Shown here in pieces: positions 5,839 to 64,000 of a stretch of 64,000 bases of DNA (the stretch's first letter is position 1; every line of letters starts with the position of its first letter). The DNA is taken from positions 62,001 to 126,000 of the forward strand of contig NIVC01002871.1 of NCBI GenBank assembly GCA_002269645.1. Reading direction: 5' to 3'. Position numbers and translations under genes: made by a program. The stretch comes from Macrostomum lignano. Its lineage: Eukaryota. The notes below the pieces were generated by a model. It was not told the DNA's origin. It did not search any database and worked only from the letters and a program-made list of their open reading frames with translations.

Positions 5839-6159
5839 GGAGGCGTCTGAAGTTAAGCGTCGACAAAGTCTCACTCCGTTTGCTTAGTGCGCATGTGTCA
5901 GCACATAAAAGGAACTGAAATACCGCCTGTTCGGTCTCCCAGCTTTATTCATATAGGATTTCGTATGAAGTTAATGAAATACAAAAATAGCTAGATTAAG
6001 GCGAAGCTGAACTTGGAAACTCTTGCACACTACTTGTGATTCTCACAACCCGCTAAGAGTCCTTACAGACCACATTCGGAGGAGAGCAGAGCATCTCAGC
6101 GGTAAACGATGATATTAGGCAAGAAAATTGCCCACGGGGTTGTCGATCAATTCACACCT

Positions 6160-43229: not shown

Positions 43230-43268
<39 letters not shown>

Positions 43269-46200
43269 GGCATACAGGCATACACTAAGACAGACATACA
43301 CTAAGACAGACAGACAGACAGGCATACACTAAGACAAGACAGACAGACAGACAGACAGACAGATGGACAAGACAGACAGACTGTAAAACAGACAGAGAGA
43401 CCGAAAGGCAGGTGGACAGTCAGAGACGGGGGTCGTATCCCAGTGGTCTAGCGCGGCGCTCTGATATCCCAGGCTCGATTCCAAGTGCAGTCACATTAAT
43501 TTGAGGATTCATTTGGAATCTCGGCTTGGCTCTGCTCGTGCAATTAACGGTCTTGAGGGCCAACCCCCAAGGCACAGTGAAGTGTACATGCCTAACGATA
43601 AATACGTTAGTGCCGCTGTACACTCCTGTGTGAGTGTGCGCCTGTGCGTATGACTGCGTACGTATCCGCGCGCTTGTGTGCCTGCTCAGGGGAGTCGGCG
43701 GAATGGGCAGTACGCTCGTAATGCCTCGCCGGTTGTGTGACCATGTCGCCTAAAGTGCGTGCACACAGCCCCTACAGCCCATAGCTCAAATTAAAAACTC
43801 CTAACAAATAGTCAGAGAAACAGCCTGACTGACTGACAGTTAATTATGTGTAGATTCATATTATAGAATGTTAGATGTTTTAATAACTACCTACTAATGC
43901 GATCTTATCTAATGCAATTATTATCATCTGAAATTTTCAGATTGGCTTCAACGCGGAGCACAGTTGGTAAGTTTTGTTTTAATGCTCTCTTTCTACTAGC
44001 ACTCTCGGGTTACTGCAGTTTGCAGAACACAACCTGCGCTGTTCCTGGCAGTCTAAAATGTAATAAAAGCGGTACATTCTTATTTTTTATCAAGGGCCGA
44101 CGCTCCTGTACTCTCTCAGCTATGGGAAGAGACTGTTATTACCAGCGACATTGTGCCCGGCGTTGGGTGAGCTATGCTCTGTTCTTGTTATGTCTATGGA
44201 TATTAATTATTTCGTCATCACCCTTCTGGCTGTCTGTCCTTGTATTTTCCCTCGTCTAGCTGTCCTTCAATCTTTATTGTCACTCGCCTGACTGTCCTTA
44301 AATCGTTATTGTCACTCGCCTGACTGTCCTTCAATCTTTATTGTCACTCGCCTGACTGTCCTTCAATCTTTATTGTCACTCGCCTGACTGTCCTTCAATC
44401 GGTATTGTCACTCGCCTGACTGTCCTTCAATCTTTATTGTCAGTCACCTGACTGTCCTTCAATCGTTATTGTCAGTCACCTGACTGTCCTTCAATCTTTA
44501 TTGTCACTCGCCTGACTGTCCTTCAATCGTTATTGTCACTAGCCTGACGGTCCTTCAATCGTTATTGTCAGTCACCTGACTGTCCTTCAATCGTTATTGT
44601 CACTAGCCTGACGGTCCTTCAATCGTTATTGTCAGTCACCTGACTGTCCTTCAATCGTTATTGTCAGTCACCTGACTGTCCTTCAATCTTTATTGTCAGT
44701 CACCTGTCCTTCAATCTTTATTGTCAGTCACCTGACTGTCCTTCAATCTTTATTGTCAGTCACCTGACTGTCCTTCAATCTTTATTGTCACTCGCCTGAC
44801 TGTCCTTCAATCTTTATTGTCACTCGCCTGACTGTCCTTCAATCGTTATTGTCACTAGCCTGACTGTCCTTCAATCGTTATTGTCAGTCACCTGACTGTC
44901 CTTCAATCGTTATTGTCACTAGCCTGACGGTCCTTCAATCGTTATTGTCAGTCACCTGACTGTCCTTCAATCGTTATTGTCACGCGCCTGACTGAGCTCC
45001 AGTAGAGGCGCAAGTCACTCGCATAGAAACGAATATCACAGACGAACAACCATAGTCGCCAACCAATTGCAGCTACAACTCGGACGGGCACTGCAAAGGC
45101 TCGCCAAAGGGCACGGTGCCAAATCCGATCCGATTGCAATGGGATCTCAGCGCCTCCTGTCGCGACGTGATCTCGAGCCAGCTGCGCGTTGCCACTAACT
45201 TATTAAATGACGTCGACCTGCACCTGGTGGTGCACACGCAGTTTGGCAAGGGCGCCATGAAGACCTGTCGAATGAGTCCGGACGCATTTGTCCAGCTGGC
45301 CCTGCAGCTCGCCTACTTCCGCGACAGCGGCGGCCAGTTCTGCTTGACCTACGAGGCCTCCATGACCCGGCTGTTCAGGGAGGGCCGCACCGAGACTGTG
45401 CGCTCGTGCACCAATCAGTCGTGCGAGTTCGTGCGCGCTATGGAGTCAGGAAATGCCAGCGTGAGTCGGCCTTCCTTTCTGAATGATTGCTAGGTAATGG
45501 GTGTGCGGCACGTAGGCAGCTGCTCACTGATAAGGAGCAATGGCCATTGGGTGCAGCGGCTCACTGATAAGGAGCAATGGCCATTGGGTGCAGCTGCTCA
45601 CTGATAAGGAGCAATGGCCATTGGGTGCAGCTGCTCACTGATAAGGAGCAATGGCCATTGGGTGCAGCGGCTCACTGATAAGGAGCAATGGCCATTGGGT
45701 GCAGCTGCTCACTGATAAGGAGCAATGGCCATTGGGTGCAGCTGCTCACTGATAAGGAGCAATGGCCATTGGGTGCAGCGGCTCACTGATAAGGAGCAAT
45801 GGCCATTGGGTACAGGGACCATTAGGTGCAGCCACCATTAGGTGCAGGAACCGGTGGTGAAATGCAAATTCTTATCCAGCCTGGCAATAATTATACACTC
45901 GGAATACAACAGTTGCACTCCTCTCCACCTTGTCCGTCCCCTCCCGGCAGAAGGCGGACCTGATTCGGCTGGTCCGGGCCGCGGCCGACAAGCACCAGAC
46001 CATGTACCGGGACGCAATGACCGGCAAAGGCGTCGATCGGCATCTCTTCACTCTGTACGTTGTTTCAAAGTACTGCAAGATCCAGTCGCCATTCCTAGAG
46101 AAGGCGCTGCACTGCCAGTGGAAACTGTCCACTTCGCAGACTCCGCACGGTCAGACTGGGAAACTGGATCTGAGGAATAGTCCCGACTCTATTAGCGCTG

Positions 46201-46992
46201 GCGGCGGCTTTGGCCCCGTCTCCGAGGACGGCTACGGCGTCTCCTACATTATCGCCGGAGAGGACACCATCTTCTTTCACATCAGCAGCCGCGTGAGCTG
46301 CGACCTGACTGTGAGTTGCTCCTGCATTCTGATAGCTAGATTAGCTTGGAGTAGGTTAATTAGTAGATACATTAGCTTGGAGTAGGTTAATTTGTAGATA
46401 GATTAGCTTGGAGTAGGTTAATTAGTAGATACATTAGCTTGGAGTAGGTTAATTTGTAGATAGATTGGCTTGGAGTAGGTTAATTAGTAGATACATTAGC
46501 TTGTGTAGGTTAATTAGTAGATACATTAGCTTGGAGTAGGTTAATTAGTAGATACATTAGCTTGGAGTAGGTTAATTAGTAGATATTATTAGCTTGGAGT
46601 AGGTTAATTAGTAGATATTATTAGCTTGAAGTAGGTTAATTTGTAGACGGATTAGCTTGGAGTAGGTTAATTAGTAGATACATTAGCTTGGAGTAGGTTA
46701 ATTAGTAGATACATTAGCTTGGAGTAGGTTAATTAGTAGATACATTAGCTTGGAGTAGGTTAATTTGTAGATACATTAGCTTGGAGTAGGTTAATTTGTA
46801 GATACATTAGCTTGGAGTAGGTTAATTGGTAGATACATTAGCTTGGCGTAGGTTAATTAGTAGATAGATTAGCCTAAATTAGGTAGTCCCCCCACTGCCA
46901 TCTCCATGGCAACCATTGTTAAACTGCAGAACTCTCGCCGGTTCGGTGACCAGATCTGCCGGGCCCTGCAGGATCTGAAGAATCTCTTCTAG
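38920..46992 (+). CDS. CPT1: Carnitine O-palmitoyltransferase 1, ~769 aa, 9 exons
   Basis: Exons 38920-39197, 40295-40772, 41550-41831, 42800-43162, 43941-43966, 44095-44166, 45073-45460, 45951-46310, 46930-46992 (2310 nt; phases consistent). Motifs [88 protein letters not shown]. Confidence 0.95.
39305..40255. repeat. Minisatellite, 32-bp unit CCTCATTCTAGAGAGTCACTCTCCAGTCGCAT (CPT1 intron 1)
   Basis: About 29 copies with recurring variant blocks. Confidence 0.95.
41255..41455 (+). mobile_element. Possible diverged tRNA-SINE with (CATAGTAAC)n tail
   Basis: A/B-box-like TAGTCCTAACGGTAG and GGGTTCGCG; CACATGCCTGTCAATGAGAAAGTCGGGCC resembles the family A/B domain; tail repeated about 3 times. 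Confidence 0.4.
42030..42370. repeat. (CTGT)n microsatellite (CPT1 intron 3)
   Basis: Read directly. Confidence 0.9.
43198..43400. repeat. (GACA)n microsatellite (CPT1 intron 4)
   Basis: Read directly; reverse complement of the intron-3 tract. Confidence 0.9.
43428..43742 (+). mobile_element. tRNA-derived SINE, family A, copy 3
   Basis: GGGGGTCGTATCCCAGTGGTCTAGCGC...GGCTCGATTCC head; body matches copies 1 and 2. Confidence 0.8.
44258..44992. repeat. Minisatellite, 32-bp unit GTCACTCGCCTGACTGTCCTTCAATCGTTATT
   Basis: About 23 copies. Confidence 0.95.
45517..45812. repeat. Minisatellite, 37-bp unit GCTCACTGATAAGGAGCAATGGCCATTGGGTGCAGCT
   Basis: About 8 copies. Confidence 0.95.
46335..46875. 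repeat. Minisatellite, ~31-bp unit ATTAGCTTGGAGTAGGTTAATTAGTAGATAC
   Basis: About 17 copies starting ~25 nt after the donor at 46311. Confidence 0.95.
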
Positions 46993-48607: not shown

Positions 48608-51600
48608 ATGCCCTTTAAACAGCAACCGACCGCTGGCATCGTGGCTTTGACGTCTCGGCCACGATTCACTCTTCTCCTGACGTTGCTGCTCAGCTTGAGC
48701 AGTCAAGCAAATCCAGCCAGAGGCGTCAGCGCCGGCAGAAAGTGGCGCCGACTGCCGCGCGCCGGACTGATTGAATGCGGTCATGAGTTCAACGACCTGC
48801 AGTCCAAGTGGCTGCTGGCTCCGCTGATTGTACGCGCTAGCTGGACGCCGCCGCCGCGACAACACGGGTATCGTCGGCATGACCAGCCGCTGCTCAACCT
48901 GACGGTGACTGTTCACTCCGTGCTCAAGGCTGACTCGCCGCGCCTGCAGGCTCACATTGACGGGATCAGAGAGACTCTAGTTGGCGAGTTCAGCCACCAA
49001 TTTCGGCGCCGGCTGCAAAGGCTGTCCTGCACTCCGTCTGCTGACCGAACTGGTGCATACTCAGCCAAAGGCTATATCCTGTTTCTGAAGCCGACTGGTC
49101 TGAGCAACTACTTCCGGCATGCCTTCCTGCCGGCCAGGTTCACTCAGCACAATCTGGTCAAGATGCAGCTGGTGCAGAGTGAGCGACTTGCGCTGAACTG
49201 AGGCTGAGATGGACAGACAGACAGACGGACAAAAAAACGGACAGATGGACAGGATGAGATCGACAGGCAAATAGACTAAGAACGACAGACAGACAGACAA
49301 GTTACGAGCGTAAGGTGACCAGACAGACAGGAAGGCTAAGATAGACAGACAGACAGACAGACAGGCTAAGATTGCGAGCCGGACGAGAGAAAAGACCCAG
49401 CTAATCAAAGCTCTGCAGTCAGTGGTGATTATTTAGTATTACCCCTCCCCTGCCACTGCGTCAGTAAAATGATGAGCCGGTAGGTGCAGGCGGCAATGCC
49501 TAATTTGCGCAAGAAATGAGATAAAAAATGCCAAAAATAATTTTATTTTTTATTGACGGAGCTTACATTATGAGCTAAAAACAGCATTTCAAAAGTACAA
49601 GATGTACTTTATTGCAATCAAAGTACTACGTCTTGGAGACCCCACAACTTGCTACAAGCTACTGAAAGTTCCCGTACACTTTTAAAAAAGTGCATCTGTA
49701 CCCGAAATAAAAGTGCACATGAACTTGTGAGCAAAAAGTACTACTAATCTTCATGCAAACGCTTCTCCAACCCAGCGAGCCCGCCAGCGTTGACTGGCCG
49801 CATTCGATATCGATGGAAGCGTCGGGGGCCGCGACGGCCCCGGCGGAGAAATCGACGCGGACGTCGACTCCCACAGAAGCCGTCGAGCCTGCGCCTGTCC
49901 TGCAGCGCCGAGGGCAGCCCGCCGCCTCGAGCTCGCTGGCTCAAAGACGGACGAGATGTCGTCGACGCGACGAACTCGGCAGGCGGCAGACGGGACATCC
50001 GGGTGGTGGCCAGGATCAAGAAAAGGTACCGCTTTCGGTTTTGCTTTGTATGCTTTCTCTTCTACATCCTCCGCTGCTCCTCCTTCCGCTCCTACCATCA
50101 TCCTCCTCCATCCTCCATCCTCCATCCTCCATCCTCCACCATCCTCCTCTCTCCACCATTCTCCTCTCTCCTCCATCCTCCTCCATCCTCCACCATCCTC
50201 CTCTCTCCACCATTCTCCTCTCTCCTCCATCCTCCTCCATCCTCCACCATCCTCCTCTCTCCACCATTCTCCTCTCTTCTCCATCCTCCACCACCCTCCT
50301 CTCTCCACCATTCTCCTCTCTCCTCCATCCTCCTCCATCCTCCACCATCCTCCTCTCTCCACCATTCTCCTCTCTTCTCCATCCTCCACCACCCTCCTCT
50401 CTCCACCATCCTCCTCTCTCCTCCATCCTCCTCCATCCTCCACCATCCTCCTCTCTCCACCATTCTCCTCTCTCCTCCATCCTCCTCCATCCTCCACCAT
50501 CCTCCTCTCTCCACCATTCTCCTCTCTTCTCCATCCTCCACCACCCTCCTCTCTCCACCATTCTCCTCTCTCCTCCATCCTCCTCCATCCTCCACCATCC
50601 TCCTCTCTCCACCATTCTCCTCTCTTCTCCATCCTCCACCACCCTCCTCTCTCCACCATCCTCCTCTCTCCTCCATCCTCCTCCATCCTCCACCCTCCTC
50701 CATCATCCTACATCCTCCATCCTCCTCCATCCCCCGCAGAGGCCAGCTGGTGACCACCCGGTTGGTCCTGAAGCGGCCGACACAGTCAGCTGTGGGCAAC
50801 TTCAGCTGCCAGTTCTACAATCTTTATGGCAATGCCAGCGCTTCTATTGCTGTCAGAGGTGAGTCTATTTACTAAGTGCATATTTACCTTTTGTAAACAG
50901 AAATATTCTTGTTAAATTAAACCTACTACTACTACTACTACTACTGCCGAGTAGCAGTAGTGTAGTGTGTACTTTCTCTAAACCGTATAGTAGAATTTCT
51001 ACCAGCCAATCAGCGCAAAGCCTTCAGTAAGATTGATTGCATTGAATTCGATAAGCTGTGGCGGCTGATTCTTGATTTATTATCAAGTGTGTGCGAGGGA
51101 GGGGAATCATCTCATTCTGTTCATCGAATTTCTGCCTGCCGGACTGCAACAACTACTAGCTGAAGACAAAATGCCAGCGGACTCAGGAAGCAGCGGATTT
51201 CTTGCCGCCCCGAACAGCGCCAGGGCCAGGCAAGGTTGGTCAAATCCGGGGCGACCTCTGTTGCAAACTATTTATATAGAATTTTTTGTTTTGTCTCAAA
51301 AACTTTGTTCGGTTTCAAGGCTTCAAGGTCATGACCTCATTGTCATTAGATCCCATGTCATGACCTCATTGTCATTAGATCCCATGTCATGACCTCATTG
51401 TAGTTAGATCCAAAGTCATGACCTCCTTTTGGCTAGATTCGAGGACATGACCTCCTTTTGGTTAGATTCGAGGAAATGATTGCGGTTAGATTCGAGGACA
51501 TGACCTCATTGCGGTTAGATTCGAGGACATGACCTCATTGCGGTTAGATTTGAGGACATGACCTCATTGCGGTTAGATTTGAGGACATGACCTCATTGCA

Positions 51601-54600
51601 GTTAGATTCGAGGACATGACCTCATTGCGGTTAGATTCGAGGACATGACCTCATTGCGGTTAGATTCGAGGACATGACCTCATTGCGGTTAGATTCGAGG
51701 ACATGACCTCATTGCGGTTAGATTTGAGGACATGACCTCATTGCGGTTAGATTCGAGGACATGACCTCATTGCGGTTAGATTCGAGGACATGACCTCATT
51801 GCGGTTAGATTCGAGGACATGACCTCATTGCAGTTAGATTCGAGGACATGACCTCATTGCGGTTAGATTCGAGGACATGACCTCATTGCGGTTAGATTCG
51901 AGGACATGACCTCATTGCGGTTAGATTCGAGGACATGACCTCATTGCGGTTAGATTCGAGGACATGACCTCATTGCAGTTAGATTCGAGGACATGACCTC
52001 ATTGCGGTTAGATTCGAGGACATGACCTCATTGCGGTTAGATTCGAGGACATGACCTCATTGCGGTTAGATTCGAGGACATGACCTCATTGCGGTTAGAT
52101 TCGAGGACATGACCTCATTGCGGTTAGATTCGAGGACATGACCTCATTAGCACAACCTGTGGGTATCCTGCACTCGCACTTCCGCAATCAATGCTTCAAC
52201 GCAGGCGAATCTCTAGCATTATGCCATCTTTGACTGAACAGCCAGTCCTAGCAAGAGAAGTATTGCAGGGTTTTGGCGAGACTAGACCCCTCCATACACA
52301 GGCACACACACACTAGTTAGTAGTAAATATTTTAAAGCTCGTGTTCTCAAAACTCCCACGCTTATTTGCTCAAGCGCTGCAATTGATGACTGCGGGGGTT
52401 GGCTGGACTCAAGCTGCGGTTTCTAGCTCGTATACCTCTCGCTGTCATTCACTAGCAATGGAATCTCATTCTCAGGTTGTGCCGCTGGGGGGGGGGGGGG
52501 TTGGTTGAGGCGAGCCTGGGGAAGTGTGTGTACTCGAGTGTCTCATTGTCACAGAGTCCCTCTGTCTGCGGCAGCGAGGCTGCACAGACGCAGGGAGACA
52601 GAGAGAGAGAGAGGAGATAGAGAAGGCTGGTCAGTGAAATGCGGTAGAAGATGCCACTAATGCAACAGCTGGTTGAAGACTATATAATTTTGAAAGAAAA
52701 AAACGCAAAAGAGCAGATCTTCTTTTGGGCAGTGCTCGAATATTTCAGATTTATTAAATGAACCCATAGCTTTGGCTGAAGATTTAGCTTAAGCCGCAAT
52801 CCCTATTTATGCTGATAAAAATTGCATTACAGTTTCCGACATTTTCGCCGATATGGGGCAGTCGCAGTCAACTACTCGTACAAGTGAGTGACTTCTCTGT
52901 ACTGTTGCAACAAAGGTTTAGTTAGGCATTGACAGCCTTTCGTTTGGAGTATCTAGCTCGTACTTGGAAGGGAATGGACACTGCTGTCTATGGCATTCAA
53001 GAGATTAGCACCTCATTCTTTTCTTTCCTCCATGGCCTGGCCGCAGCGCAAAAACCCCGGGGTTAAGACCATAGACAGCAGCAACAGCAACTATGTCTGT
53101 GGCCTAAACCCTTGGGCTTTTGGGGCCTCGGAGACGGCCGATAAATGCATTAGTGAATGCTGGTGTGCCACATCAATATAGAATTTCTTAGAAAAATAGT
53201 TTGACTACTAGCAATCTTCGCCCCCCGTTGGGGGACATCTGTATAGAATCTCTGTTCTCTACAAGTAACAGAAAGATAGCCAAATAAAGCTTTCACAAAG
53301 AAAACAGACAAACTACTCAAATGAAGTGAAATGCAAAAAGAAATCATCCCAAGACAGCAAGCATGCCCCAGATAGCAAGCATCCCCAGATGGCAAGCACC
53401 CTCAGATAGCAAGCATCCCCAGATAGCAAGCATCCCCAGATAGCAAGCATCCCCCAGATAGCAAGCATCCCCCAGATAGCAAGCATGCCCCAGATAGCAA
53501 GCATCCTCAGATAGCAAGCATCCCCCAGATAGCAAGCATCCCCAGATAGCAAGCATCCCCAGATAGCAAGCATCCCCCAGATAGCAAGCATCCCCAGATA
53601 GCAAGCATCCCCCAGATAGCAAGCATCCCCCAGATAGCAAGCATCCCCCAGATAGCAAGCATGCCCCAGATAGCAAGCATCCCCAGATAGCAAGCATCCC
53701 CCAGATAGCAAGCATCCCCCAGATAGCAAGCATCCCCCAGATAGCAAGCATCCCCCAGATAGCAAGCATCCCCCAGATAGCAAGCATCCCCCAGATAGCA
53801 AGCATGCCCCAGATAGCAAGCATCCCCAGATAGCAAGCATCCCCCAGATAGCAAGCATCCCCCAGATAGCAAGCATCCCCCAGATAGCAAGCATCCCCCA
53901 GATAGCAAGCATCCCCCAGATAGCAAGCATCCCCAGATAGCAAGCATCCCCCAGATAGCAAGCATCCCCCAGATAGCAAGCATCCCCCAGATAGCAAGCA
54001 TCCCCCAGATAGCAAGCATCCCCCAGATAGCAAGCATCCCCAGATAGCAAGCATCCCCCAGATAGCAAGCATCCCCAGATAGCAAGCATCCCCAGATAGC
54101 AAGCATCCCCAGATAGCAAGCATCCCCCAGATAGCAAGCAAGTCACTCAGCAACATATTTAAGTTTCCACCCCGAAACCAGTGATCAACTTTTCTCAGAT
54201 CCCAGTCCCGAGTGACGCAATCCTCGTGTCTCAACCGTGAATGGCTTAAGCTGGTGAGGAGAGAGTGGAGAGTTTTGGCTAGAGTTGAATTAAAACTGCC
54301 ACTTGCTGACCAGTGGTTTGAGGGTGGAAACTTTGACATGTTGCTGAGTGTAATAATGACAATAATAACTGATTACACCTACCCTAATGGCCAGATGTGC
54401 AACCGACAGCCCCAGCTATTGCGCGGCGCATCTGAAGACTGCGTACGGCTGTTCAGTCCAAGGACTGGGGGGTCGCCACACATACCTTCAATTACCCCAG
54501 CTAATGCTGGCACCCATTTTACAACTGGGTGAACTGAAGCAATGCAGAGTGAAGTGCTTTGCTCAAGGACACAAATTGTCCCGAGTGGGTCGAGAATCGA

Positions 54601-57600
54601 ACCCCCGACCTTTCAGTCGTGAGTCCGACGCTCTAACCACTAGGCTCCAGCCCCCTTGACACTGTTAAGTGTACAGGCTCGATAGTTAATAACTATTGAC
54701 TCAAGAGTTAGGCTGACAAATTTGATTTCTACCGATATGTAGCGTTGATAACTTTGTTAGCTCTATGAGTTAAGCTGGAAGAGTTGATTTCGACCGATAC
54801 ACTCGTACACAATACAGCGTAGACAGTTTCGATCGAGAAACAATACACTGAACAGATGGTGGCAACAATTGTTAGTTGAGATCAATAGCATTTTGCCGTC
54901 AATTGTTTGCTAATCTTAACTGACGATTTTATTGTAACATCGGTCCTCGAAACCTTAACCCTCGCGTTGTTTGCTTTCACCGTTCAGTGGCCACAACGCC
55001 CCCGCCGACTCGCTACCTGTGCGATTCGAGCTCGATGACCCGCTGCCTGCACGGCGGCACCTGCTATTATGACCAACTGAACAGCCGGCCCTACTGCATG
55101 TGAGTTGCTCAGCTGCTGTATAAAAGAAAGGCAAGGCCCTGTTATGTAACTTTCACTGTTTTTTTACAGTAACGGCTAATACAATTCAACTGGAACTCAA
55201 GTCCTACAGGTGATAAGGGAGAGAATACGAGCCGTAGTGAGGGAGAGAGAGGTAGAGAGAGAGAAGCGAGTAGCTTTCGAAAAAGCACTAGAGTTAAGCT
55301 GATACAGTTTCTTCGACCGATATGTAGCGACAATAACTTTGCTAGCTCTAAATTTTACCTGGTGAAGTTGATTTCTACCGATATGTATTGTTAATAACTT
55401 TATTAGCTCAAGATTCAAGTTGGAAGAGTTGATTTCTACCGATATGTATTGTTAATAACTTTATTAGCTCAAGATTCAAGTTGGAAGAGTTGATTTCTAC
55501 CGATATGTATTGTTAATAACTTTATTAGCTCAAGATTCAAGTTGGAAGAGTTGATTTCTACCGATATGTATCGTTAATAACTTAATTGGCTCAAGATTCA
55601 AGTTGGAAGAGTTGATTTCTACCGATATGTATTGTTAATAACTTTATTAGCTCAAGATTCAAGTTGGAAGAGTTGATTTCTACCGATATGTATCGTTAAT
55701 AACTTAATTGGCTCAAGATTCAAGTTGGAAGAGTTGATTTCTACCGATATGTATCGTTAATAACTTAATTGGCTCAAGATTCAAGTTGGAAGAGTTGATT
55801 TCTACCGATATGTATTGTTAATAACTTTATTAGCTCAAGATTCAAGTTGGAAGAGTTGATTTCTACCGATATGTATCGTTAATAACTTAATTGGCTCAAG
55901 ATTCAAGTTGGAAGAGTTGATTTCTACCGATATGTATTGTTAATAACTTTATTGGCTCAAGATTCAAGTTGGAAGAGTTGATTTCTACCGATATGTATCG
56001 TTAATAACTTAATTGGCTCAAGATTCAAGTTGGAAGAGTTGATTTCTACCGATATGTATCGTTAATAACTTAATTGGCTCAAGATTCAAGTTGGAAGAGT
56101 TGATTTCTACCGATATGTATCGTTAATAACTTTATTGGCTCAAGATTCAAACAGGAAAAGTTGATTTCTACCGATATGTATTGTTGATAACTTTGTTGGC
56201 TAAGCTGGATAAGCTAGCAAAGTTAATTTCCACCGATATGTAGCGAAAACAATTTTGTCAAAAGCATAGGTCTATTCGGCAGGAGTTCACCTCGCATCCA
56301 GAAGTAACCGGGCAGAGAGACGGGACCTGATTGCTGAAGGGACACGAGTACTCAGAAATCCATATTGGCGATTGCTCCCACTTCCTTAAGGCAGGCAGGC
56401 TCAAGGAACAAGCATAGGTTTTCCTGCACCCAGCGTGTGGTGTCAGATCGACTGTCTCCTCGTACTCCACAGCGATTTATATTTCCGAATATTTTAAAGC
56501 ACAAGATGGACTAACTGAGATTGGCGGGCAGCAGAGCAAACACTGGATAGGAATTCAGCCATGAAAATTGGAGCTTGTGCTGCAGAGCAAACAGACCTCT
56601 CCTTGCTAGCTTGATTTTTCTGTTCTCAAATGTTTAAACCCGCGCTTAAGCCTGCGCTTTGGAGACTTTCGCATCCAGTTTTTATCTTCATCAAAGTTCC
56701 GCGAGTCTGGACTAGCCTGCGCACCTCATCGCCGATCAATCAATCAGAGAGCGGCGGAGAGTGCATCAGCTGCTATTTGGCCTCTTGCGGTTGCCCGCTA
56801 AGCCTCATCTCAGCGCGCAGTCTCTCCAATTCTCGGCCGAGCTCGATTGCTCATTTTGCCTGGCCCTCACCACCTGCCCCTCACTGCCTGCCCCTCACCG
56901 CCTTCCCCTCACTGCCTGCCCCTCACCGCCTGCCCCTCACTGCCTGCCCCTCACCGCCTTCCCCTCACCGCCTTCCCCTCACCGCCTGTCCCTCACCGCC
57001 TTCCCCTCACCGCCTTCCCCTCACCGCCTTCCCCTCACCGCCTTCCCCTCACCGCCTGTCCCTCACCGCCTTCCCCTCACCGCCTTCCCCTCACCGCCTT
57101 CCCCTCACCGCCTTCCCCTCAACGCCTTCCCCTCAACGCCTTCCCCTCACCGCCTTCCCCTCACCGCCTTCCCCTCAACGCCTTCCCCTCAACGCCTTCC
57201 CCTCACCGCCTGTCCCTCCCCGCCTGTCCCTCACCGCCTGGCCCTCCCCGCCTGTCCCTCCCCGCCTGTCCCTCACCGCCTGCCCCTCACTGCCTGCCCC
57301 TCACCGCCTTCCCCTCACCGCCTTCCCCTCACCGCCTGGCCCTCCCCGCCTGTCCCTCCCCGCCTGTCCCTCACCGACTGCCCCTCACTGCCTGCCCCTC
57401 ACCGCCTTCCCCTCACCGCCTTCCCCTCACCGCCTTCCCCTCACCGCCTTCCCCTCACCGCCTTCCCCTCACCGCCTTCCCCTCAACGCCTTCCCCTCAA
57501 CGCCTTCCCCTCACCGCCTTCCCCTCACCGCCTTCCCCTCACTGCCTGCCCCTCACCGCCTGGCCCTCACCGCCTGGCCCTCACCGCCTGTCCCTCCCCG

Positions 57601-60600
57601 CCTGCTCCTCCTCGCCTGCCCCCTAATCGCCTGGCCCTCACCGCCTGTCCCTCCCCACCTGCCCCCTAATCGCCTGCCCCTCACCGCCTGTCTTTCCCCG
57701 CCTGCCCCTCACCGCCTGCCCCTCACCGCCTGTCCCTCCCCGCCTGCCCCCTAATCGCCTGCCCCTCACCGCCTGCCCCTCCCCGCCTGCCCCCTAATCG
57801 CCTGGCCCTCACCGCCTGCCCCTCCCGCCTGCCCCCTAATCGCCTGGCCCTCACCGCCTGGCCCTCACCGCTTGTCCTTCTCCGCTGCCCCTCTCCGCTT
57901 CCCTCAGCCTCCAACCAATATATGTCTCGTATTCTCCTCTCTTCTATTCTCATTGAATCCCCTGTGACGCACACACCAACTCTCTCTCTACCAGCTTCTC
58001 TCCCAAAGCTTCTGCCACTCAGTCGCTCGAGTGCCCTCCAAGTCTATCAGTTTTCCCGCCTTCATAGCGCACTGGAGCATCATTATCCAATCCCGCTTAG
58101 AAGTCCCAAAATCCCCAATAGTCGCCCTAACTAGCAGCCTTCTCCCTTCCCCAGCCATCACTCGAATTCATTTCGAATCCTGTCGCAGGATCTGATTAAT
58201 CGCCCCTCGCCTCCTTACCCTCCTCCCCACTACCAATGGAATTCCCCTGGCTGCAGTGCGCGCCAGAGAGCGTTGTTAACAGGCGAATATTGCGCTGATT
58301 TTCAGCGACGCAGATTTTTTTATTCATCACAGGCCGCTCCCTGCTGGGCCCTTGGGGACCAATTTAGCCTGCAATTTGGCCGGGCAGTCACATATCGAGG
58401 CACTTCTGTTCCTGTCTCAGTTCTGGACTTTCGCTGACCCTCCCACTCTCTGCTCTCTTTTATGCTAAGGCGCTGTTCTAAAAGTACAGCATGAGAAAGA
58501 GGGGACTAAAATGCTCAATTAGGGGGCAGGGCAGCTCAGCCGTTAAACGTGTCTGAATCTCGGGCAGCGACTCCTTTGGTTTGATACCTTGCGCGCGCAG
58601 ACTCCAAGCTCATCTGGGGCTTGTGCGCGAAAACTGGGCTGGGGGTTGTCGTGCGTACAGTATCTGCGTACAGCTGGAGTCTCCACAGCCTTCCTGCATT
58701 ATCTGTTGAATATAAACCGCTCGTCTACTCATTGCAATTTAAATTCGCGCCAAAATCCGGAAATTTTTCAAATCACAATTACGCTCGTAGTTGAATGTTT
58801 TTCTTTTTTGTTTTGCTTAAAATGACGATTTGATTCCAGATGCCCGAGCCCGTACACTGGTCTCATTTGCGAAAAATTTGATGATGACGCTTTTGAGCAG
58901 AGTGAGTCATATGAGTCATAGTTTCGACCAGCCTATGTTTGTTAAAACGATTGTCAAATTGGCGTTTCTGCTGGTTTTAAATAACACGATAACTCAAAAC
59001 AAAATTTTATTGCTGCTACTGAATCAAAATTGATTTTCTAAACTCCTTTCACACAAGTTGAGGTCAACTTCTTGACAATAAATCTAGACAAAGTCAAGGA
59101 TCTGGCTAATAAAGAGTTTGTTTTACAAGCTAAATGTATAACTGCTTTGCTGATATAATATTTTCAACTAACATTTGCTAATCTTTTTATAATTAATGAA
59201 ACAGGCTAAGCCAGATGACACGTCACCCCACCCTATCGAATCATGCTTTTAATTACAGGTGCCTCACCACGGCTGCGGAGGCGGCTCGTCACCATGGGAA
59301 TTGCGTTGAATTCCAGCGTAATTATCAGGCCGGGGGATCTGAGCGACTTTGAGGGGATTTCAGGATAGGGAAAGACCGTTGTTAGGAAAATTAATTATTT
59401 TAAAAAAATTATTCTAAATTAGAAAAAGGATATTTGTTTCAGAATGAGAAATTCGGAGTTCAGAATGAGAAATCTGGAGTTCAGAATGAGAAATCTGGAG
59501 TTCAGAATGAGAAATCTGGAGTTCAGAATGAGAAATCTGGAGTTCAGAATGAGAAATCTGGAGTTCAGAATGAGAAATCTGGAGTTCAGAATGAGAAATC
59601 TGGAGTTCAGAATGAGAAATCGGGAATTCAAAATGAGAAATAAGAAAAGTCATGATTCAGAACAGGCTTGAGAATTAAATGTCATCGACTTTGGAAATAT
59701 CTGAGGAGAAATGCATTTAGATGTTTACCAGAATTCAGCATAACTAGAACCGCACCCTCAGATGACCAGAAGCAAACAGCTTGAATAGCCGCCCGCCTAC
59801 CCTTTCCAGTCCGCTTAGTGGTGTATCCTCATTACCCGGAGACTGCCTGCGACTCGGTCCACTGAAAATCCTCGCTTAAAATCTGCCCATTTACGGCCTC
59901 ACTGATGTCTCTCCTTAGCCCGAATTCTCTCGCCCCTGCACCCAAGTACACGGGCTTCTGCTTGCACTTTCCGGTCCAGTGGATCCAGAAATTCCTGTCA
60001 GTCTCTTTGCCGAGCGCCTACTGGTGGGCAAAACTAGCCAAGAAGTTATCCTCAACCCACTAGAATTCCCTCCGCCCTGTGAGAGCAGTGTTTAGCAGCT
60101 GGGCGGGTCGATGCGGGAGTTCGATCCGAAACGGGACCCGGCTGATTTTTGTAGTGCAGTACGGAAATGGGACGGGAGAGAGACAGGGAGAGAGTGACTG
60201 CGGGGAGGGAGAAACCCAACCTAGAAAAGGGAAGTACAAATTGAGGTTTGAATCTACAAGCTGGCATTAGGCATCCAGTGAGAATCATTAGGCTGGCATT
60301 AGGCATCCAGTTAGAATCATTAGGCTGGCATTAGGCATCCAGTTAGAATCATTAGGCTGGCATTAGGCATCCAGTTAGAATCATTAGGCTGGCATTAGGC
60401 ATCCAGTTAGAATCATTAGGCTGGCATTAGGCATCCAGTTAGAATCATTAGGCTGGCATTAGGCATCCAGTTAGAATCATTAGGCTGGCATTAGGCATCC
60501 AGTTAGAATCATTAGGCTGGCATTAGGCATCCAGTTAGAATCATTAGGCTGGCATTAGGCATCCAGTTAGAATCATTAGGCTGGCATTAGGCATCCAGTT

Positions 60601-62976
60601 AGAATCATTAGGCTGGCATTAGGCATCCAGTTAGAATCATTAGGCTGGCATTAGGCATCCAGTTAGAATCATTAGGCTGGCATTAGGCATCCAGTTAGAA
60701 TCATTAAGCTGGCATTAGGCATCCCGTTAAAATCATTAGGCTGGCATTAGGCATCCAGTTAGAATCATTAGGCTGGAATTAGGCATCCAGTTAGAATCAT
60801 TAGGCTGGCATTAGGCATCCAGTTAGAATCATTAGGCTGGCATTAGGCATCCAGTTAGAATCATTAGGCTGGCATTAGGCATCCAGTTAGAATCATTAGG
60901 CTGGCATTAGGCATCCAGTTAGAATCATTAGGCTGGCATTAGGCATCCAGTTAGAATCATTAGGCTGGCATTAGGCATCCAGTTAGAATCATTAGGCTGG
61001 AATTAGGCATCCAGTTAGAATCATTAGGCTGGCATTAGGCATCCAGTTAGAATCATTAGGCTGGCATTAGGCATCCCGTTAGAATCATTAGGCTGGCATT
61101 AGGCATCCAGTTAGAATCATTAGGCTGGCATTAGGCATCCAGTTAGAATCATTAGGCTGGCATTAGGCATCCAGTTAGAATCATAAGGCTGGCATTAGGC
61201 ATCCAGTTAGAACCATTAGGCTGGTATTAGGCATCAAGTTAGAATCATTAGGCTGGCATTAGGCATCCAGTTAGAATCATTAGGCTGGTATTAGGCATCC
61301 AGTTAGAATCATTAGGCTGGTATTAGGCATCCAGTTAGAACCATTAGGCTGGTATTAGGCATCCAGTTAGAATCATTAGGCTGGCATTAGGCATCCGCAC
61401 TGGAACTGTTTGCAGAGCTGCTGAGCAGCACGGCGGCCCGGGCTGTGGACCGAGTCCTGACCCGCATGACCATAGGGGTCATAGCGGTAGTCATAGCTCT
61501 CATGCTCATACTGTCATGGTATCTGGCTAAGTAAGGCTGCGGGACTGCCGCTCTGATCTGTGCGGGATCATCCTGGATGTTGTTTCCTTTGTTTCTATTC
61601 AATCTTATTCTGTTGTTTCGGTTTAATAACCAACTTAGATTGTCGGTGTTGTTTTGCATTATTCTGCTTTGTGTTTTCATTTTTAATAGCGCCGCGGTTT
61701 GCACCAATCATAGTTAATGAATTGTTTTGCAGACTACGTGAAAAGTCTGGCGTCCGCTAGCGCAATTTCGCGATCGAACACGGGCCTAATAGTGGCCATG
61801 ATCATTGCTCTGCTCATCGTTATTGGCCTGCTCATAGCTGTCTGCTACCTGACCTGCAGCATGTGAGTCTGCTTAGTTCATGTCTGACTGAATCTTCTCT
61901 GGACTCAAAGTCTTACACTTCATTCCAACCGCTGCAATGGCTGCACAATCAGCTGGTAGGGTGGGTCTCAGATTTGGTTGCAATTTGTACTTTTATGTCT
62001 GGATAGGAAAAGAAATCGAAGGCCAGATAGATAGGAGTGACCTGATAGGTAAGAAAGGCTTGATGGAAAGTTTTGAGAATCTCCCTGCAACGCTGGCTCC
62101 AACGGGCGGCCTCTCCAATCGACCGAGCAGCGAGAGAGAAGACAGAAAGAAAGGAATAGCATTGAAAGTGTTGGGGTGAGAGAACGTCCTTGAGGCGGTT
62201 TGGGCCTGTCCCCTGGTTCCTGGTCAGGTGAGGGTCCCAGCTAAGAGTTTAATTATGCAGGACAGTGCGCCTGCCTGGCTGGTTCCCACGGACCCACCTC
62301 CCAGCAACTCATCCCGGATCTTGTGGTGCCCAGGCTTCAATCATTCGCTTTATTGCACCTGGGCCGTCTCGGCGCGGCTGTAAATTCGGTTTATACAGTT
62401 TTATTTTATAATTTCTACTTTAAATTGTTGTCAACTGCTTGTTGTTTTGGGCAAACTTTCTGTCCTTCTCTTCTCTACTGTGCTTGTTGGCTTGAAAACT
62501 GTTCTTTGCTATGAATATATTATTGCATGCACGCTGGAAACTTGCAGTTAAGCTCTTATTTAACTTAATGGAACAATATTGGGCGCGTCCGATAAGTGCG
62601 GAACTGATGTCAGACTGCAGGCGTCCAAGGCCAAGAAATCGATTTGGTTCCTCTCTTGGTTTGATGAATTTTTCTCACATTATAGAGGCCGCGCAGTCGA
62701 GGGAAGAAAGCGATAAGGAAAAATGGGAACTATTTAAGCGTATAGTAAGTAGTAAGGAAAATTTGAATATGATTTGTTATTTACGGCAATGCGGAACCAA
62801 TGACGAATTAAGAACGCAGGGCGTTACCAAATAGATCATCTGTGGTCGGTTCGTTCTGCAGGAAGCGAAACTCGAAGCTCAGTGGCCCTTCACGGACAAA
62901 TCATTTATTGAATGTCAAATTGAATGTCACATTGCCTGGCGAAGATATGTCTGGAGCATCGTCATCAGCAAATTGA
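48608..62976 (+). CDS. Neuregulin/vein-like EGF-family ligand precursor: signal peptide, N-terminal domain, Ig domain, S/T linker, EGF, TM, short tail (~463-468 aa)
   Basis: Exons 48608-49178, 49776-50025, 50740-50858, 52833-52883, 54988-55099, 59259-59317, then 61416-61530 or 61733-61862, then 62862-62976 (phases 1,2,1,1,2,1,2 consistent). Ig motifs LRLSCSAEGSPPPRARWLKDG and GNFSCQFYNLYG. The EGF is split by a phase-2 intron between C4 and C5, typical of EGFR-ligand genes. The last exon is the least certain. Confidence 0.8.
49210..49370. repeat. (GACA)n microsatellite
   Basis: Read directly. Confidence 0.85.
50098..50730. repeat. Pyrimidine-rich minisatellite (TCCTCCATCCTCCACCATCCTCCTCTCTCCACCAT...) filling the intron inside the Ig domain
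   Basis: Ends ~9 nt before the acceptor at 50739. Confidence 0.9.
51171..51234 (+). CDS. Candidate alternative first exon of the neuregulin-like gene (Ig-less isoform)
   Basis: ATG-MPADSGSSGFLAAPNSARARQ followed by a phase-1 donor AG|GTTGGT; CCAAT at ~51006. Confidence 0.35.
51328..52148. repeat. Minisatellite, 29-bp unit CATGACCTCATTGCGGTTAGATTCGAGGA
   Basis: About 28 copies. Confidence 0.95.
53355..54140. repeat. Minisatellite, 18-19-bp unit CAGATAGCAAGCATCCCC(C)
   Basis: About 42 copies. Confidence 0.95.
54397..54655 (-). mobile_element. Near full-length tRNA-headed SINE with MIR/CORE-like domain
   Basis: Minus strand: GGGGCTGGAGCCTAGTGGTTAGAGCG (A box)...GGGGGTTCGATTC (B box)...TGTGTCCTTGAGCAAAGCACTTCACTCTGCATTGCTTCAGTTCACCCAGTTGTAAAATGGG. 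Confidence 0.85.
55365..56240. repeat. Minisatellite, 61-bp unit GTTGATTTCTACCGATATGTATTGTTAATAACTTTATTAGCTCAAGATTCAAGTTGGAAGA
   Basis: About 13 copies; diverged relatives at ~54690-54800. Confidence 0.95.
56862..57905. repeat. C-rich minisatellite, ~15-bp unit CCCTCACCGCCTTCC
   Basis: Read directly. Confidence 0.95.
59437..59640. repeat. Minisatellite, 21-bp unit GTTCAGAATGAGAAATCTGGA
   Basis: About 9 copies. Confidence 0.95.
60263..61396. repeat. Minisatellite, 32-bp unit GGCTGGCATTAGGCATCCAGTTAGAATCATTA
   Basis: About 35 copies, ending ~19 nt before the acceptor at 61415. Confidence 0.95.
61416..61530 (+). CDS. Transmembrane exon A of the neuregulin-like gene
   Basis: TTTGCAG| acceptor, |GTAAGG donor; encodes LLSSTAARAVDRVLTRMTIGVIAVVIALMLILSWYLA; phase 1 to 2. 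Confidence 0.75.
61733..61862 (+). CDS. Transmembrane exon B (alternative) of the neuregulin-like gene
   Basis: TTTTGCAG| acceptor, |GTGAGT donor; encodes YVKSLASASAISRSNTGLIVAMIIALLIVIGLLIAVCYLTCS; phase 1 to 2. Confidence 0.75.
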
Positions 62977-63725: not shown

Positions 63726-64000
63726 TTCCAGTTTCTAATTGTACGACGCCACAGGTGGAAGTGGATGCATGCCAGGTGGGCCGGGTTGTGATTGGCCAGC
63801 TCTGGAGGCTCTCCTGCCTAGCCCTGTCCGCACGCTCGTATATAAGGGCCAGATTTCCAGTTGAGGCAGTCACACTTTTATAAATACAACTCTCCACAGA
63901 AGCACTTGTTCAGCTGATGGTGCGCCTGTGTGTGTGTGCGTGTGTGAGTGGATGGTCAATGGGGTAATCGGCAAATCAGGAATTCGGCAAATCAGGAATT

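What the first reader, a model, noticed from the sequence alone, without database searches (positions are those of the whole stretch)
61416..61862. Two mutually exclusive transmembrane exons in a neuregulin-like EGF ligand
Seen: two adjacent exons, each with strong splice sites and identical phases (1 to 2), encode different stalk plus TM segments (…DRVLTRM-TIGVIAVVIALMLILSWYL versus …ISRSNT-GLIVAMIIALLIVIGLLIAVCYL). Including both would shift the frame, so they must be alternatives. Established: the stalk and TM determine whether EGF ligands are shed by ADAM proteases or by rhomboids, which prefer small helix-breaking residues near the TM start. Inference: splicing may switch the shedding route or signalling range; exon B has an Ala/Ser/Gly-rich entry and extra Cys residues. 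Swapping the whole TM segment is unusual among the neuregulin isoforms I know.
Basis: partly seen in the sequence, partly recalled or inferred. Interest (0 to 1): 0.7.

Follow-up and report, generated by a model that had tools for sequence, protein, structure and literature searches.

The report
Two alternative membrane anchors in neuregulin
A flatworm (Macrostomum) neuregulin gene has two adjacent exons that each encode a stalk plus membrane anchor and cannot both be used: one is the ancient neuregulin anchor shared with humans, the other is flatworm-specific, and the same pair sits in a related M. lignano gene.

Summary
Exons 61416-61530 (A, 115 nt) and 61733-61862 (B, 130 nt) have AG/GT borders. 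Both run phase 1 to 2, and each encodes a stalk plus a hydrophobic helix. Including both gives a premature stop.

Chance is excluded: they are the only two such candidates on either strand of the window. Both use synonymous codons like the window's other genes.

The gene is a Macrostomum NRG-type ligand: signal peptide, NRG N-domain, Ig, EGF, transmembrane segment, short tail. No transcript data for this gene could be reached.

Comparative evidence is strong. An A-type exon of exactly 115 nt and the same phase exists in two M. lignano paralogues (46-65% identity, z about 9). In one paralogue it lies 213 nt upstream of the annotated B-type exon, unannotated.

Exon A aligns without gaps to the juxtamembrane/transmembrane segment of neuregulins from polyclads to human. 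Exon B is lineage-specific.

The preceding EGF C-loop exons (58840-58901, 59259-59317) form a second frame-exclusive pair.

The proposed shedding switch is untested. Conservation does not support B as the sequence-specific (rhomboid-type) substrate.

The parts
48608..49178 (+). Exon 1: signal peptide (MPFKQQPTAGIVALTSRPRFTLLLTLLLSLSSQA) plus the conserved NRG N-terminal domain (ECGHEFNDLQSKWL...GYILFLKPT..YFRHAFLP). The 3' border (donor CAGA|gtgagc, phase 1) is approximate.
   Evidence: Exhaustive HMMER with this ORF finds only three M. lignano NRG-type families at 42-48% identity. tblastn maps them to 48647-49189. Codon-usage z is 5.6 and 6.5. The same KYIFFLxPT motif occurs in NRGs printed in PMC4914847 suppl..
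49776..50025 (+). Exon 2: basic linker plus the first half of the Ig I-set domain (..KPSSLRLSCSAEGSPPPRARWLKDGRDV..). The acceptor could instead be 49877.
   Evidence: Pfam I-set 30.9 bits, above cutoff. tblastn to P0079/P0080/P0081. Phases checked.
50740..50858 (+). Exon 3: second half of the Ig domain (GQLVTTRLVLKRPTQSAVGNFSCQFYNLYGNASASIAVR), phase 2->1.
   Evidence: (acceptor and donor both in the top 1%).
54988..55099 (+). EGF exon 1: C1-C4 of the EGF domain (..RYLCDSSSMTRCLHGGTCYYDQLNSRPYC), phase 1->2.
   Evidence: 41-55% identity to the M. lignano paralogues.
58840..58901 (+). EGF exon 2a: canonical C-loop (I-CPSPYTGLICEKFDDDAFEQ), 62 nt, phase 2->1. It completes CX7CX5CX10CXCX8C.
   Evidence: Pfam EGF 26.1 bits against a cutoff of 21.5. 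PDB matches to epiregulin, TGF-alpha, NRG1 and EGF. 71% identity to P0079 CPAFYTGTLCEKFD.
59259..59317 (+). EGF exon 2b: alternative non-canonical C-loop (M-CLTTAAEAARHHGNCVEFQ), 59 nt, phase 2->1. It is frame-exclusive with exon 2a.
   Evidence: Translation. Conserved as CLIVSNETAENCVEFQ in L001 (used in model P0087) and as CLPDTANGSTAATPRDCAEFL in L002. The EGF score falls below cutoff with this exon.
61416..61530 (+). Stalk+TM exon A: 115 nt, phase 1->2, LLSSTAARAVDRVLTRM-TIGVIAVVIALMLILSWYLA. This is the canonical neuregulin juxtamembrane/TM segment.
   Evidence: Identical 115-nt length and phase in L001 (19577-19691) and L002 (19665-19779), 20/37 and 17/37 identities, z 9.4 and 9.3. Gap-free alignment to NRG TMs of seven bilaterians, summed z 6.1.
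61733..61862 (+). Stalk+TM exon B: 130 nt, phase 1->2, YVKSLASASAISRSNT-GLIVAMIIALLIVIGLLIAVCYLTCS. This is a lineage-specific alternative anchor.
   Evidence: The positional and phase counterpart in L002 is 19993-20128 (136 nt), annotated in P0079 and in the published M. lignano NRG transcript. Sequence similarity is weak (z 2.4) but one Cys is invariant, 7 residues before the exon end.
62862..62976 (+). Tail exon (phase 2 entry): KRNSKLSGPSRTNHLLNVKLNVTLPGEDMSGASSSAN*, stop TGA at 62974-62976.
   Evidence: Acceptor in the top 1%. A basic start follows either TM. The analogue in paralogues is G/A + RRRLD... Caveats: no codon-usage signal, and other phase-compatible acceptors at 62007 and 62686.

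Best explanation
The window carries a Macrostomum neuregulin (NRG-type EGF ligand) gene whose C-terminal half is built from two consecutive pairs of frame-exclusive alternative exons, in the order a, b, A, B.

Exon A encodes the ancestral neuregulin juxtamembrane plus transmembrane segment. Exon B lies 202 nt downstream and encodes an unrelated stalk (Ala/Ser-rich) and a longer helix (about 25 against about 20 hydrophobic residues) with Cys residues at the cytosolic end. Both are phase 1->2 with lengths of 1 mod 3, so a productive mRNA holds exactly one of them. Including both gives a stop inside B, far upstream of the last junction, which should trigger NMD. Skipping both gives a short soluble Ig-EGF form.

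The outcome is two type I pro-ligands with the same ectodomain core and the same short basic tail but different anchors. Because stalk and TM are what sheddases, intramembrane proteases and sorting machinery read, the choice most likely sets how, where and whether the EGF module is released.

Shown: exon anatomy, frame logic, coding signature, conservation of both exon types and of their tandem order in paralogues, and the identity of A with the pan-bilaterian NRG TM.

Inferred: actual alternative use in this gene, probable pairing of a with B and b with A, and any effect on processing.
For: - Anatomy and frames.
- Uniqueness in 128 kb of sequence.
- Codon usage against non-coding controls.
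- Ligand identity.
- A-type exon conserved with identical length and phase in L001 and L002.
- In L002 the unannotated A-type exon lies 213 nt upstream of the annotated B-type exon, and all four a/b x A/B combinations are in frame; a+B reproduces P0079.
- The A-type exon is intact in all three near-identical M. lignano copies, and the single difference is synonymous.
- Use of each type in M. lignano: a+B in the transcriptome-derived 'M. lignano NRG' and in P0079/P0081/P0090; b+A in model P0087.
- Paralogue Mlig001833 has a stop inside its a-type exon and no B-type exon, but keeps b, A and a phase-compatible RRRLD tail exon. This fits a pairing of a with B and b with A.
- A equals the canonical NRG TM.
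- Splicing of the juxtamembrane region is known to change processing of EGF ligands and other membrane proteins: lin-3 and ROM-1, PMC519001; CADM1 shedding, PMC5385562.
Against: - No transcript, EST or protein of this very gene could be found, so alternative use here is not observed.
- P0087 is a gene model that ends by reading through the donor (..SWYLAR, then TAA). Its support from RNA is unknown.
- B-type exons are only weakly similar to each other (z 2.4).
- A and B are barely similar to each other (z 2.2-2.6), so origin by tandem duplication is unproven.
- The tail exon shows no codon-usage signal, and the window ends 1 kb further on, so the 3' end of the model may be incomplete.
- No competing RNA structure that would enforce exclusivity was detected.
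Confidence: 0.78

Rival explanations
1. Only one of the two exons is used in this gene. The other is a silent copy that is still intact, either because it is retained in the family for use in other paralogues or because it was silenced only recently.
For: The M. lignano annotation and the published transcript of Mlig015540 use only B, and its A-type exon is unannotated. Paralogue Mlig001833 has lost B altogether, so loss of one type does happen. Exon A has the weaker acceptor and donor.
Against: Paralogue families only about 45% identical still keep the A-type exon at exactly 115 nt, open, in phase and with splice sites, at 46-65% identity. Flanking introns do not align. An unused exon would not survive that divergence. 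Both window exons carry coding-type codon usage.
Confidence: 0.12
2. The two pairs are not independent. The gene makes two fixed C-terminal modules: a+B (canonical EGF on the novel anchor) and b+A (non-canonical EGF loop on the ancestral NRG anchor). In this nested splice pattern, b and A lie inside the a->B intron.
For: Every M. lignano product seen is a+B, b+A or a-terminal. In Mlig001833 the a-type exon became terminal and B is absent, while b, A and the tail remain.
Against: All four combinations are in frame, both here and in L002. The ancestral bilaterian arrangement is a+A. There are only a handful of models and no junction counts.
Confidence: 0.45
3. One reading: the switch selects the sheddase. 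B, with its small-residue entry, would be a rhomboid substrate, and A an ADAM substrate.
For: B has the ASASAIS stalk and Gly at the TM start and middle; A contains ..AARA-VDRV.. (direct reading). For lin-3, juxtamembrane splicing decides ROM-1 dependence (PMC519001).
Against: The sequence-specific conservation lies in A, including an invariant I-G at the outer end of the helix. B stalks are conserved in composition only, which is what loosely specific metalloprotease shedding needs (PMC5385562). In B the small-residue run is separated from the helix by R-S-N-T. No protease data exist for flatworm NRGs.
Confidence: 0.12
4. The switch acts on sorting or back-signalling rather than on the sheddase. 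The short ancestral helix A keeps NRG-type intramembrane processing or partner binding. The longer, Cys-bearing helix B changes membrane domain, surface residence or palmitoylation.
For: The hydrophobic spans are about 20 and about 25 residues. One Cys is invariant 7 residues before the end of B-type exons. The vertebrate NRG1 TM is functionally sequence-sensitive: V321L disrupts gamma-secretase-dependent nuclear back-signalling (PMC11502234). The Dscam1 exon 17 alternatives likewise encode the TM domain (PMC1397879).
Against: The tail in this gene is only 38 residues, without codon-usage signal or a Neuregulin ICD domain. There is therefore little to signal back with. The idea is purely inferential.
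Confidence: 0.25

Closest known systems
Vertebrate NRG1/NRG2 and invertebrate NRG-type ligands (Ig + EGF + TM; Barberan et al. 2016, PMC4914847)
   Same: The N-terminal NRG domain, Ig I-set domain and EGF with ErbB-ligand cysteine spacing are shared. The exon A juxtamembrane/TM motif [DK]R[VL][LI]T..GI...[AS][WY][YF].[AK][KR] followed by a basic run is also shared. The EGF C-terminal part is alternatively spliced in both (mouse Nrg1 exon 9 or 10).
   Different: Mouse Nrg1 has one common TM exon; here there are two. The tail is 38 residues without the Neuregulin intracellular domain. The conserved Arg of GxRC is Ile (GLIC). The b loop has 13 residues between C5 and C6 instead of 8.
Published 'Macrostomum lignano NRG' (Mlig015540; PAA56579.1 / A0A267E6Z9) and paralogues Mlig001833 and A0A1I8HAW4
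   Same: The architecture is the same, and so is the exon order a, b, A, B with the same phases. The A-type exon is exactly 115 nt. N-domain identity is 42-48%.
   Different: The window gene is a fourth, more divergent family member that matches no deposited protein. The deposited products show only one anchor per gene. The A-type and b-type exons of Mlig015540 are unannotated.
C. elegans lin-3 S/L/XL isoforms (PMC519001)
   Same: An EGF ligand whose alternative splicing between EGF and TM changes dependence on a rhomboid protease. This is the best precedent for the proposed functional logic.
   Different: lin-3 uses an alternative donor and a cassette exon to insert 15 or 41 residues. The TM exon itself is constant.
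Drosophila Dscam1 exon 17.1/17.2 (PMC1397879)
   Same: Two tandem, mutually exclusive exons that each encode the transmembrane segment of a type I Ig-superfamily protein, conserved across species.
   Different: Dscam1 is an adhesion receptor, not a growth-factor precursor. Its two exons are clear homologues of each other, whereas A and B here are barely similar.

Membership tests
NRG-type EGF ligand (Barberan et al. 2016 definition) | Immunoglobulin I-set domain N-terminal to the EGF domain | tested here: met
   Pfam I-set 30.9 bits (cutoff 23.7) and Ig_3 31.8 bits.
NRG-type EGF ligand (Barberan et al. 2016 definition) | Single EGF domain with ErbB-ligand spacing CX7CX4-5CX10-13CXCX8C | tested here: met
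   With exon 2a the spacing is C-7-C-5-C-10-C-1-C-8-C (direct reading). Pfam EGF scores 26.1 bits against a 21.5 cutoff. PDB matches include epiregulin, TGF-alpha and NRG1. With exon 2b the last loop has 13 residues and the score falls to 15.4 bits.
NRG-type EGF ligand (Barberan et al. 2016 definition) | Transmembrane segment C-terminal to the EGF domain | tested here: met
   Maximum 19-residue Kyte-Doolittle mean is 2.62 for A and 3.45 for B, each followed by K/M-KRNSK.
Neuregulin family proper (orthology with bilaterian NRGs) | Conserved NRG N-terminal domain and conserved juxtamembrane/TM motif | tested here: met
   The N-domain matches M. lignano NRGs at E about 1e-19 and shares the ..YIFFLxPT.. 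motif with NRG2 and invertebrate NRGs. Exon A aligns without gaps to seven bilaterian NRG TMs, summed z 6.1.
Neuregulin family proper (orthology with bilaterian NRGs) | Long cytoplasmic Neuregulin domain (Pfam PF02158) | tested here: not met
   No hit in Pfam. The tail is 38 residues. The window ends at 64000, so further exons cannot be excluded.
Functional ErbB/EGFR ligand | Conserved Arg in G-x-R-C before C6, and receptor activation | tested here: not met
   Exon 2a reads G-L-I-C and exon 2b reads H-G-N-C. Receptor binding is not testable with these tools.
Mutually exclusive exon pair | Adjacent exons with the same entry and exit phase, where joint inclusion or joint skipping breaks the frame | tested here: met
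   115 and 130 nt, both phase 1->2. A+B gives a premature stop, and skipping both shifts the frame. The same holds in L002.
Mutually exclusive exon pair | Transcripts contain one or the other, never both | not testable with these tools
   No RNA data for this gene. In paralogues each type appears singly in deposited products.
Mutually exclusive exon pair | Homology of the two exons (origin by tandem duplication) | tested here: inconclusive
   Peptide similarity z 2.2-2.6, p 0.01-0.03. No DNA similarity. The acceptor contexts are similar: GAAYTGTTT(T)GCAG|A.
Rhomboid substrate of the Spitz type | Helix-destabilising small residues in the outer part of the TM, and cleavage by a rhomboid | not testable with these tools
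   Both helices have Gly near the outer end (TIGV.. and GLIV..). No assay or validated predictor is available. A literature search for the Spitz motif found nothing usable.

The most novel reading that the evidence does not exclude
A neuregulin gene family in which splicing replaces the anchor that has been kept from flatworms to humans with an unrelated one, coordinated with a swap of the receptor-binding loop of the EGF domain. One locus would then encode two different signalling molecules: a canonical EGF on a novel, possibly palmitoylated anchor, and a non-canonical EGF on the ancestral NRG anchor. They would differ in release, range and perhaps receptor choice among the eight Macrostomum EGFRs.
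Probability: 0.3. Interest if true: 0.7.

Novelty: new variant of a known kind. Interest (0 to 1): 0.58.

Why it matters
How far an EGF-family signal travels depends on how its membrane precursor is cut and sorted, and that is decided by the stalk and the membrane helix. Known neuregulin and lin-3 isoforms vary the stalk but keep one helix.

Here a conserved genomic design offers a natural either/or between the ancestral neuregulin helix and a different one, in a regenerating flatworm that is open to RNAi and transgenesis. That makes two things directly testable: what the deeply conserved NRG transmembrane sequence is for, and whether splicing can reroute a growth factor between release pathways.

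It also shows that the deposited M. lignano NRG gene models miss two conserved exons.

Tried and rejected
- Protein search with the spliced Ig-EGF-TM-tail product: no hit.
- Exact look-up of a CPT1 ORF of the window: not on record.
- JGI metagenome scan: no relative.
- Profile search with the b+A alignment: nothing, because only cluster representatives are searched.
- Rfam and tRNA scans for lineage markers: empty.
- blastn self-comparison of 58.7-63.3 kb: no DNA similarity between A and B or between tail candidates.
- Competing RNA pairings (docking/selector type): two 12-nt perfect inverted repeats, against about 0.4 expected. Duplex energies were no better than shuffles. Not pursued without orthologous introns.
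- I first doubted exon 59259-59317 because it has no codon-usage signal, an EGF score below cutoff and no PDB matches. I considered it a terminal exon giving a soluble form. Its conservation and use in M. lignano overturned that doubt.
- The first codon-usage control, with random open windows anywhere in the window, was too permissive: 22% reached z 2.75. It was replaced by presumed non-coding windows.
- Divergence among the three near-identical M. lignano copies is too low (about 1-2%) to test selection on exon A.
- AlphaFold model of the N-terminal domain: pLDDT 46, unusable, so no fold search was run.
- Similarity of B to the TM of polyclad NRG-1 (..VLCYL..): marginal, z 1.9.
Full report
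**What is in the sequence.** The window is eukaryotic and rich in minisatellites. Reading 58.8-64 kb and translating confirms the finding at its exact coordinates.
- Exon A is 61416-61530 (115 nt), bordered by ..tttgcag| and |gtaagg.
- Exon B is 61733-61862 (130 nt), bordered by ..ttttgcag| and |gtgagt.
- Each is open in only one frame, the one entered with one base carried over and left with two.
- A reads LLSSTAARAVDRVLTRM-TIGVIAVVIALMLILSWYLA. B reads YVKSLASASAISRSNT-GLIVAMIIALLIVIGLLIAVCYLTCS.

Spliced translations show that A alone or B alone runs into a basic tail exon at 62862 (K/M-KRNSKLSGPS...SSAN*). A plus B stops nine codons into B. Skipping both shifts the frame and ends in a short soluble form.

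**Is it more than chance?** I scored all AG and GT sites of the window with a generic splice matrix. I then asked for open exon-like intervals of 70-200 nt with at least the scores of A and B. There are 52 on the two strands, and only A and B contain a TM-like 19-residue window.

I also trained a synonymous-codon model on 761 codons from three other genes of the window. It gives z 2.8 for A and 3.9 for B. Among 2337 open 40-codon windows in presumed non-coding DNA around the gene, 1.1% reach 2.7 and none reaches 3.8. A looser control was uninformative.

The donors rank in the top 3% and 1% of all GT sites. The acceptors rank only in the top 10% and 6%.

**The gene.** Upstream on the same strand lie, in order:
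- a signal peptide and a roughly 140-residue domain (exon 1, 48608-49178);
- an Ig I-set domain in two exons;
- the first four cysteines of an EGF domain (54988-55099).

Two short exons follow that can each supply C5-C6. Exon 58840-58901 (a) reads CPSPYTGLICEKF.. and exon 59259-59317 (b) reads CLTTAAEAARHHGNCVEFQ. Both are phase 2->1 with lengths of 2 mod 3, so they too exclude each other.

With a, Pfam finds I-set and EGF above cutoff. The EGF domain has the ErbB-ligand spacing and matches epiregulin, TGF-alpha, NRG1 and EGF in the PDB. With b these matches are lost.

**Relatives.** Word-indexed searches with spliced products found nothing, and no contig or transcript of this gene is on record.

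An exhaustive HMMER search with the contiguous exon 1 ORF found exactly three families, all from Macrostomum lignano, at 42-48% identity:
- Mlig015540 (P0079), which is the 'Macrostomum lignano NRG' printed in the supplement of Barberan et al. 2016 from transcriptome data;
- Mlig001833 (P0080, P0087);
- A0A1I8HAW4 (P0081, P0090).

The window shares dispersed repeats with M. lignano loci at 83-93% identity. It therefore comes from M. lignano or a close congener, and the gene is a fourth, undeposited family member.

**Both exon types are conserved.** tblastn of the family against the window showed that model P0087 continues after the EGF core with CLIVSNETAENCVEFQ. That is 53% identical to exon b. 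It then continues with RAIDRVLTATTIGVAATVIIGIVVLSWYLAR, which is 64.5% identical to exon A.

I fetched the M. lignano loci.

In L001 (Mlig001833) the order is:
- EGF1;
- an a-type exon that ends in its own stop (..CEKIDIY*, the soluble P0080);
- a b-type exon;
- an A-type exon of exactly 115 nt, phase 1->2, with a strong donor;
- a phase-compatible tail exon, about 940 nt further on, starting RRRLD...

There is no B-type exon in L001.

In L002 (Mlig015540) the order is:
- EGF1;
- the a-type exon;
- an unannotated b-type exon (CLPDTANGSTAATPRDCAEFL);
- an unannotated A-type exon, again 115 nt and phase 1->2 (YLSSRSVRQTDRLLTSVAIGTACCVIGALFLLAWYLA);
- a 213-nt intron;
- the annotated B-type exon (136 nt, phase 1->2);
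- the RRRLD exon.

All four a/b x A/B combinations are in frame there, and a+B reproduces P0079.

A-type exons share 17-20 of 37 residues without gaps, z about 9 against composition-preserving shuffles. B-type exons are only weakly alike (z 2.4) but share position, phase, an Ala/Ser-rich stalk and a Cys seven residues before the exon end. The A-type exon is intact in all three near-identical copies of Mlig015540, and the single difference is synonymous.

Families that have diverged to about 45% identity, with unalignable introns, would not keep an unused exon open, in phase and at identical length. I take this as strong evidence that both exon types are functional.

**What exon A is.** The NRG sequences printed in the Barberan supplement let me align exon A and its two M. 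lignano counterparts with the stalk/TM of seven other neuregulins. These are Prostheceraeus NRG-2, Lineus, Owenia, Crassostrea, Halicryptus, Branchiostoma and human NRG1.

They align essentially without gaps. The shared pattern is [DK]R[VL][LI]T..GI....V......[AS][WY][YF].[AK][KR] followed by a basic run. The summed similarity of exon A has z 6.1. Exon B has z 2.8 and the L002 B-type exon z 0.

Exon A is therefore the ancestral neuregulin anchor (human ..KRVLTITGICIALLVVGIMCVVAYCKTKK..). B and b are additions known so far only from Macrostomum. A link of B to the polyclad NRG-1 TM is marginal. The ancestral combination is a+A, and the genomic order is a, b, A, B.

**How it most likely works.** Exclusivity of A and B at the protein level follows from the reading frame.
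- Double inclusion puts a stop more than 100 nt upstream of the last junction, which should trigger NMD.
- The 202-nt intron is too long for steric exclusion.
- Both introns are U2-type.
- I found no convincing competing RNA structure.

Deposited M. lignano products are a+B, b+A or a-terminal. The one paralogue whose a-type exon became terminal has also lost B. This suggests, but does not prove, that a pairs with B and b with A.

Functionally the two anchors differ in three ways:
- the stalk: a conserved R..DR[VL]LT against a low-complexity A/S run;
- the helix length: about 20 against about 25 hydrophobic residues;
- the cytosolic Cys residues, present only in B.

Precedents show that such differences matter. 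lin-3 juxtamembrane isoforms differ in ROM-1 dependence (PMC519001). Juxtamembrane splicing sets ADAM17 susceptibility of CADM1 (PMC5385562). A single Val-to-Leu change in the mouse Nrg1 TM disrupts gamma-secretase-dependent back-signalling (PMC11502234). Dscam1 exon 17 is a conserved pair of alternative TM exons (PMC1397879).

Which protease or sorting route goes with which exon cannot be decided here. The conservation pattern argues that A, not B, is the sequence-specific substrate or partner.

**Caveats.**
- There is no RNA evidence for this gene.
- P0087 is a model that ends by reading through the A-type donor.
- The tail exon at 62862 lacks a codon-usage signal and has competitors at 62007 and 62686.
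- Paralogues have long tails, and the window ends at 64000.
- The exon 1/exon 2 border is approximate.

**Verdict.** The gene is a neuregulin. The two exons are frame-exclusive alternatives conserved within a Macrostomum NRG family. One is the pan-bilaterian NRG anchor. The shedding-route idea remains a hypothesis, and its assignment of roles is not favoured. This is a new variant of known kinds (neuregulin/lin-3 juxtamembrane splicing; Dscam-type TM exon pairs) and is of moderate to good interest.

Noticed in passing
window 58840-58901 and 59259-59317: A second frame-exclusive exon pair supplies the last EGF loop: canonical CPSPYTGLIC against CLTTAAEAARHHGNC (13-residue loop, no Tyr-x-Gly). 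The b type is conserved in M. lignano loci with loop lengths of 10 and 15 and an invariant CL...C[VA]EF. It parallels the alternative Nrg1 exons 9/10 but is far more divergent.
   Followed up: partly
L002 (M. lignano NIVC01002603.1) 18923-18987 and 19665-19779; same in L003, L004: The published M. lignano NRG gene (Mlig015540) contains an unannotated b-type EGF exon and an unannotated A-type (ancestral NRG) TM exon. Both lie inside introns of the deposited model.
   Followed up: yes
L001 (M. lignano NIVC01001050.1) 16206-16257, 19577-19691, 20637-20739: Paralogue Mlig001833 has a stop codon inside its a-type exon, giving a soluble Ig-EGF product, and lacks any B-type exon. An unannotated tail exon (RRRLDQLKF...QYC*) fits the A-type exon. 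Model A0A1I8IZT6 instead ends by reading through the donor.
   Followed up: yes
window 62007-62048: A 42-nt interval has good splice sites (acceptor top 3%, donor top 0.6%). Entered in phase 2 it reads KRNRRPDR*, beginning like the tail exon (KRN..). It is a possible alternative short-tail or poison exon. It shows no codon-usage signal.
   Followed up: no
window 62862-62976: The predicted tail exon has non-coding-like codon usage (GC3 0.41 against about 0.7 in other exons, z -1.5). It encodes only 38 residues, whereas paralogues have 110-195-residue tails. The 3' end of the gene may be different or lie beyond the window.
   Followed up: partly
window 60260-61396; L001 18773-19183; L002 19186-19318: A 32-bp x 35.5 minisatellite ends 20 nt before the acceptor of exon A. 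Both M. lignano paralogues also have a tandem repeat, of a different unit, in the intron just upstream of their A-type exon. This may be coincidence in a repeat-rich genome, or may bear on use of the weak A acceptor.
   Followed up: no
window 59919-60023: An exon-like open interval (105 nt, phase 2->2, codon-usage z 3.0) reads ..APAPKYTGFCLHF.., reminiscent of the EGF loop PYTGLICEKF but without C5 and out of phase with the TM exons. It may be a decayed exon copy or chance.
   Followed up: no
window 48740-49178: The roughly 140-residue domain between signal peptide and Ig (ECG..F.D.QSKWL ... GYILFLKPT..YFRHAFLP) has no Pfam match. It is shared with M. lignano NRGs and, by motif, with human NRG2 and many invertebrate NRGs. 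The AlphaFold model had pLDDT 46.
   Followed up: partly
window 59851-59862 / 61445-61456 and 60232-60243 / 61981-61992: Two perfect 12-nt inverted repeats link the intron upstream of A with exon A and with the intron downstream of B, against about 0.4 expected by chance. There is no energy signal above shuffles.
   Followed up: partly
window 40257-46385 (+), 5101-5874 (-), 20849-23927 (-): Neighbouring genes include a CPT1-type carnitine palmitoyltransferase just upstream of the NRG gene (54-58% identity to vertebrate CPT1), an ankyrin-repeat ORF, and a further multi-exon gene on the minus strand.
   Followed up: partly
window 4640-4939, 11418-11775, 29828-30022, 31408-31607, 37899-38054, 43428-43758, 54425-54656: Dispersed repeats are shared with the fetched M. 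lignano loci at 83-93% identity. This places the window in M. lignano or a close congener.
   Followed up: partly
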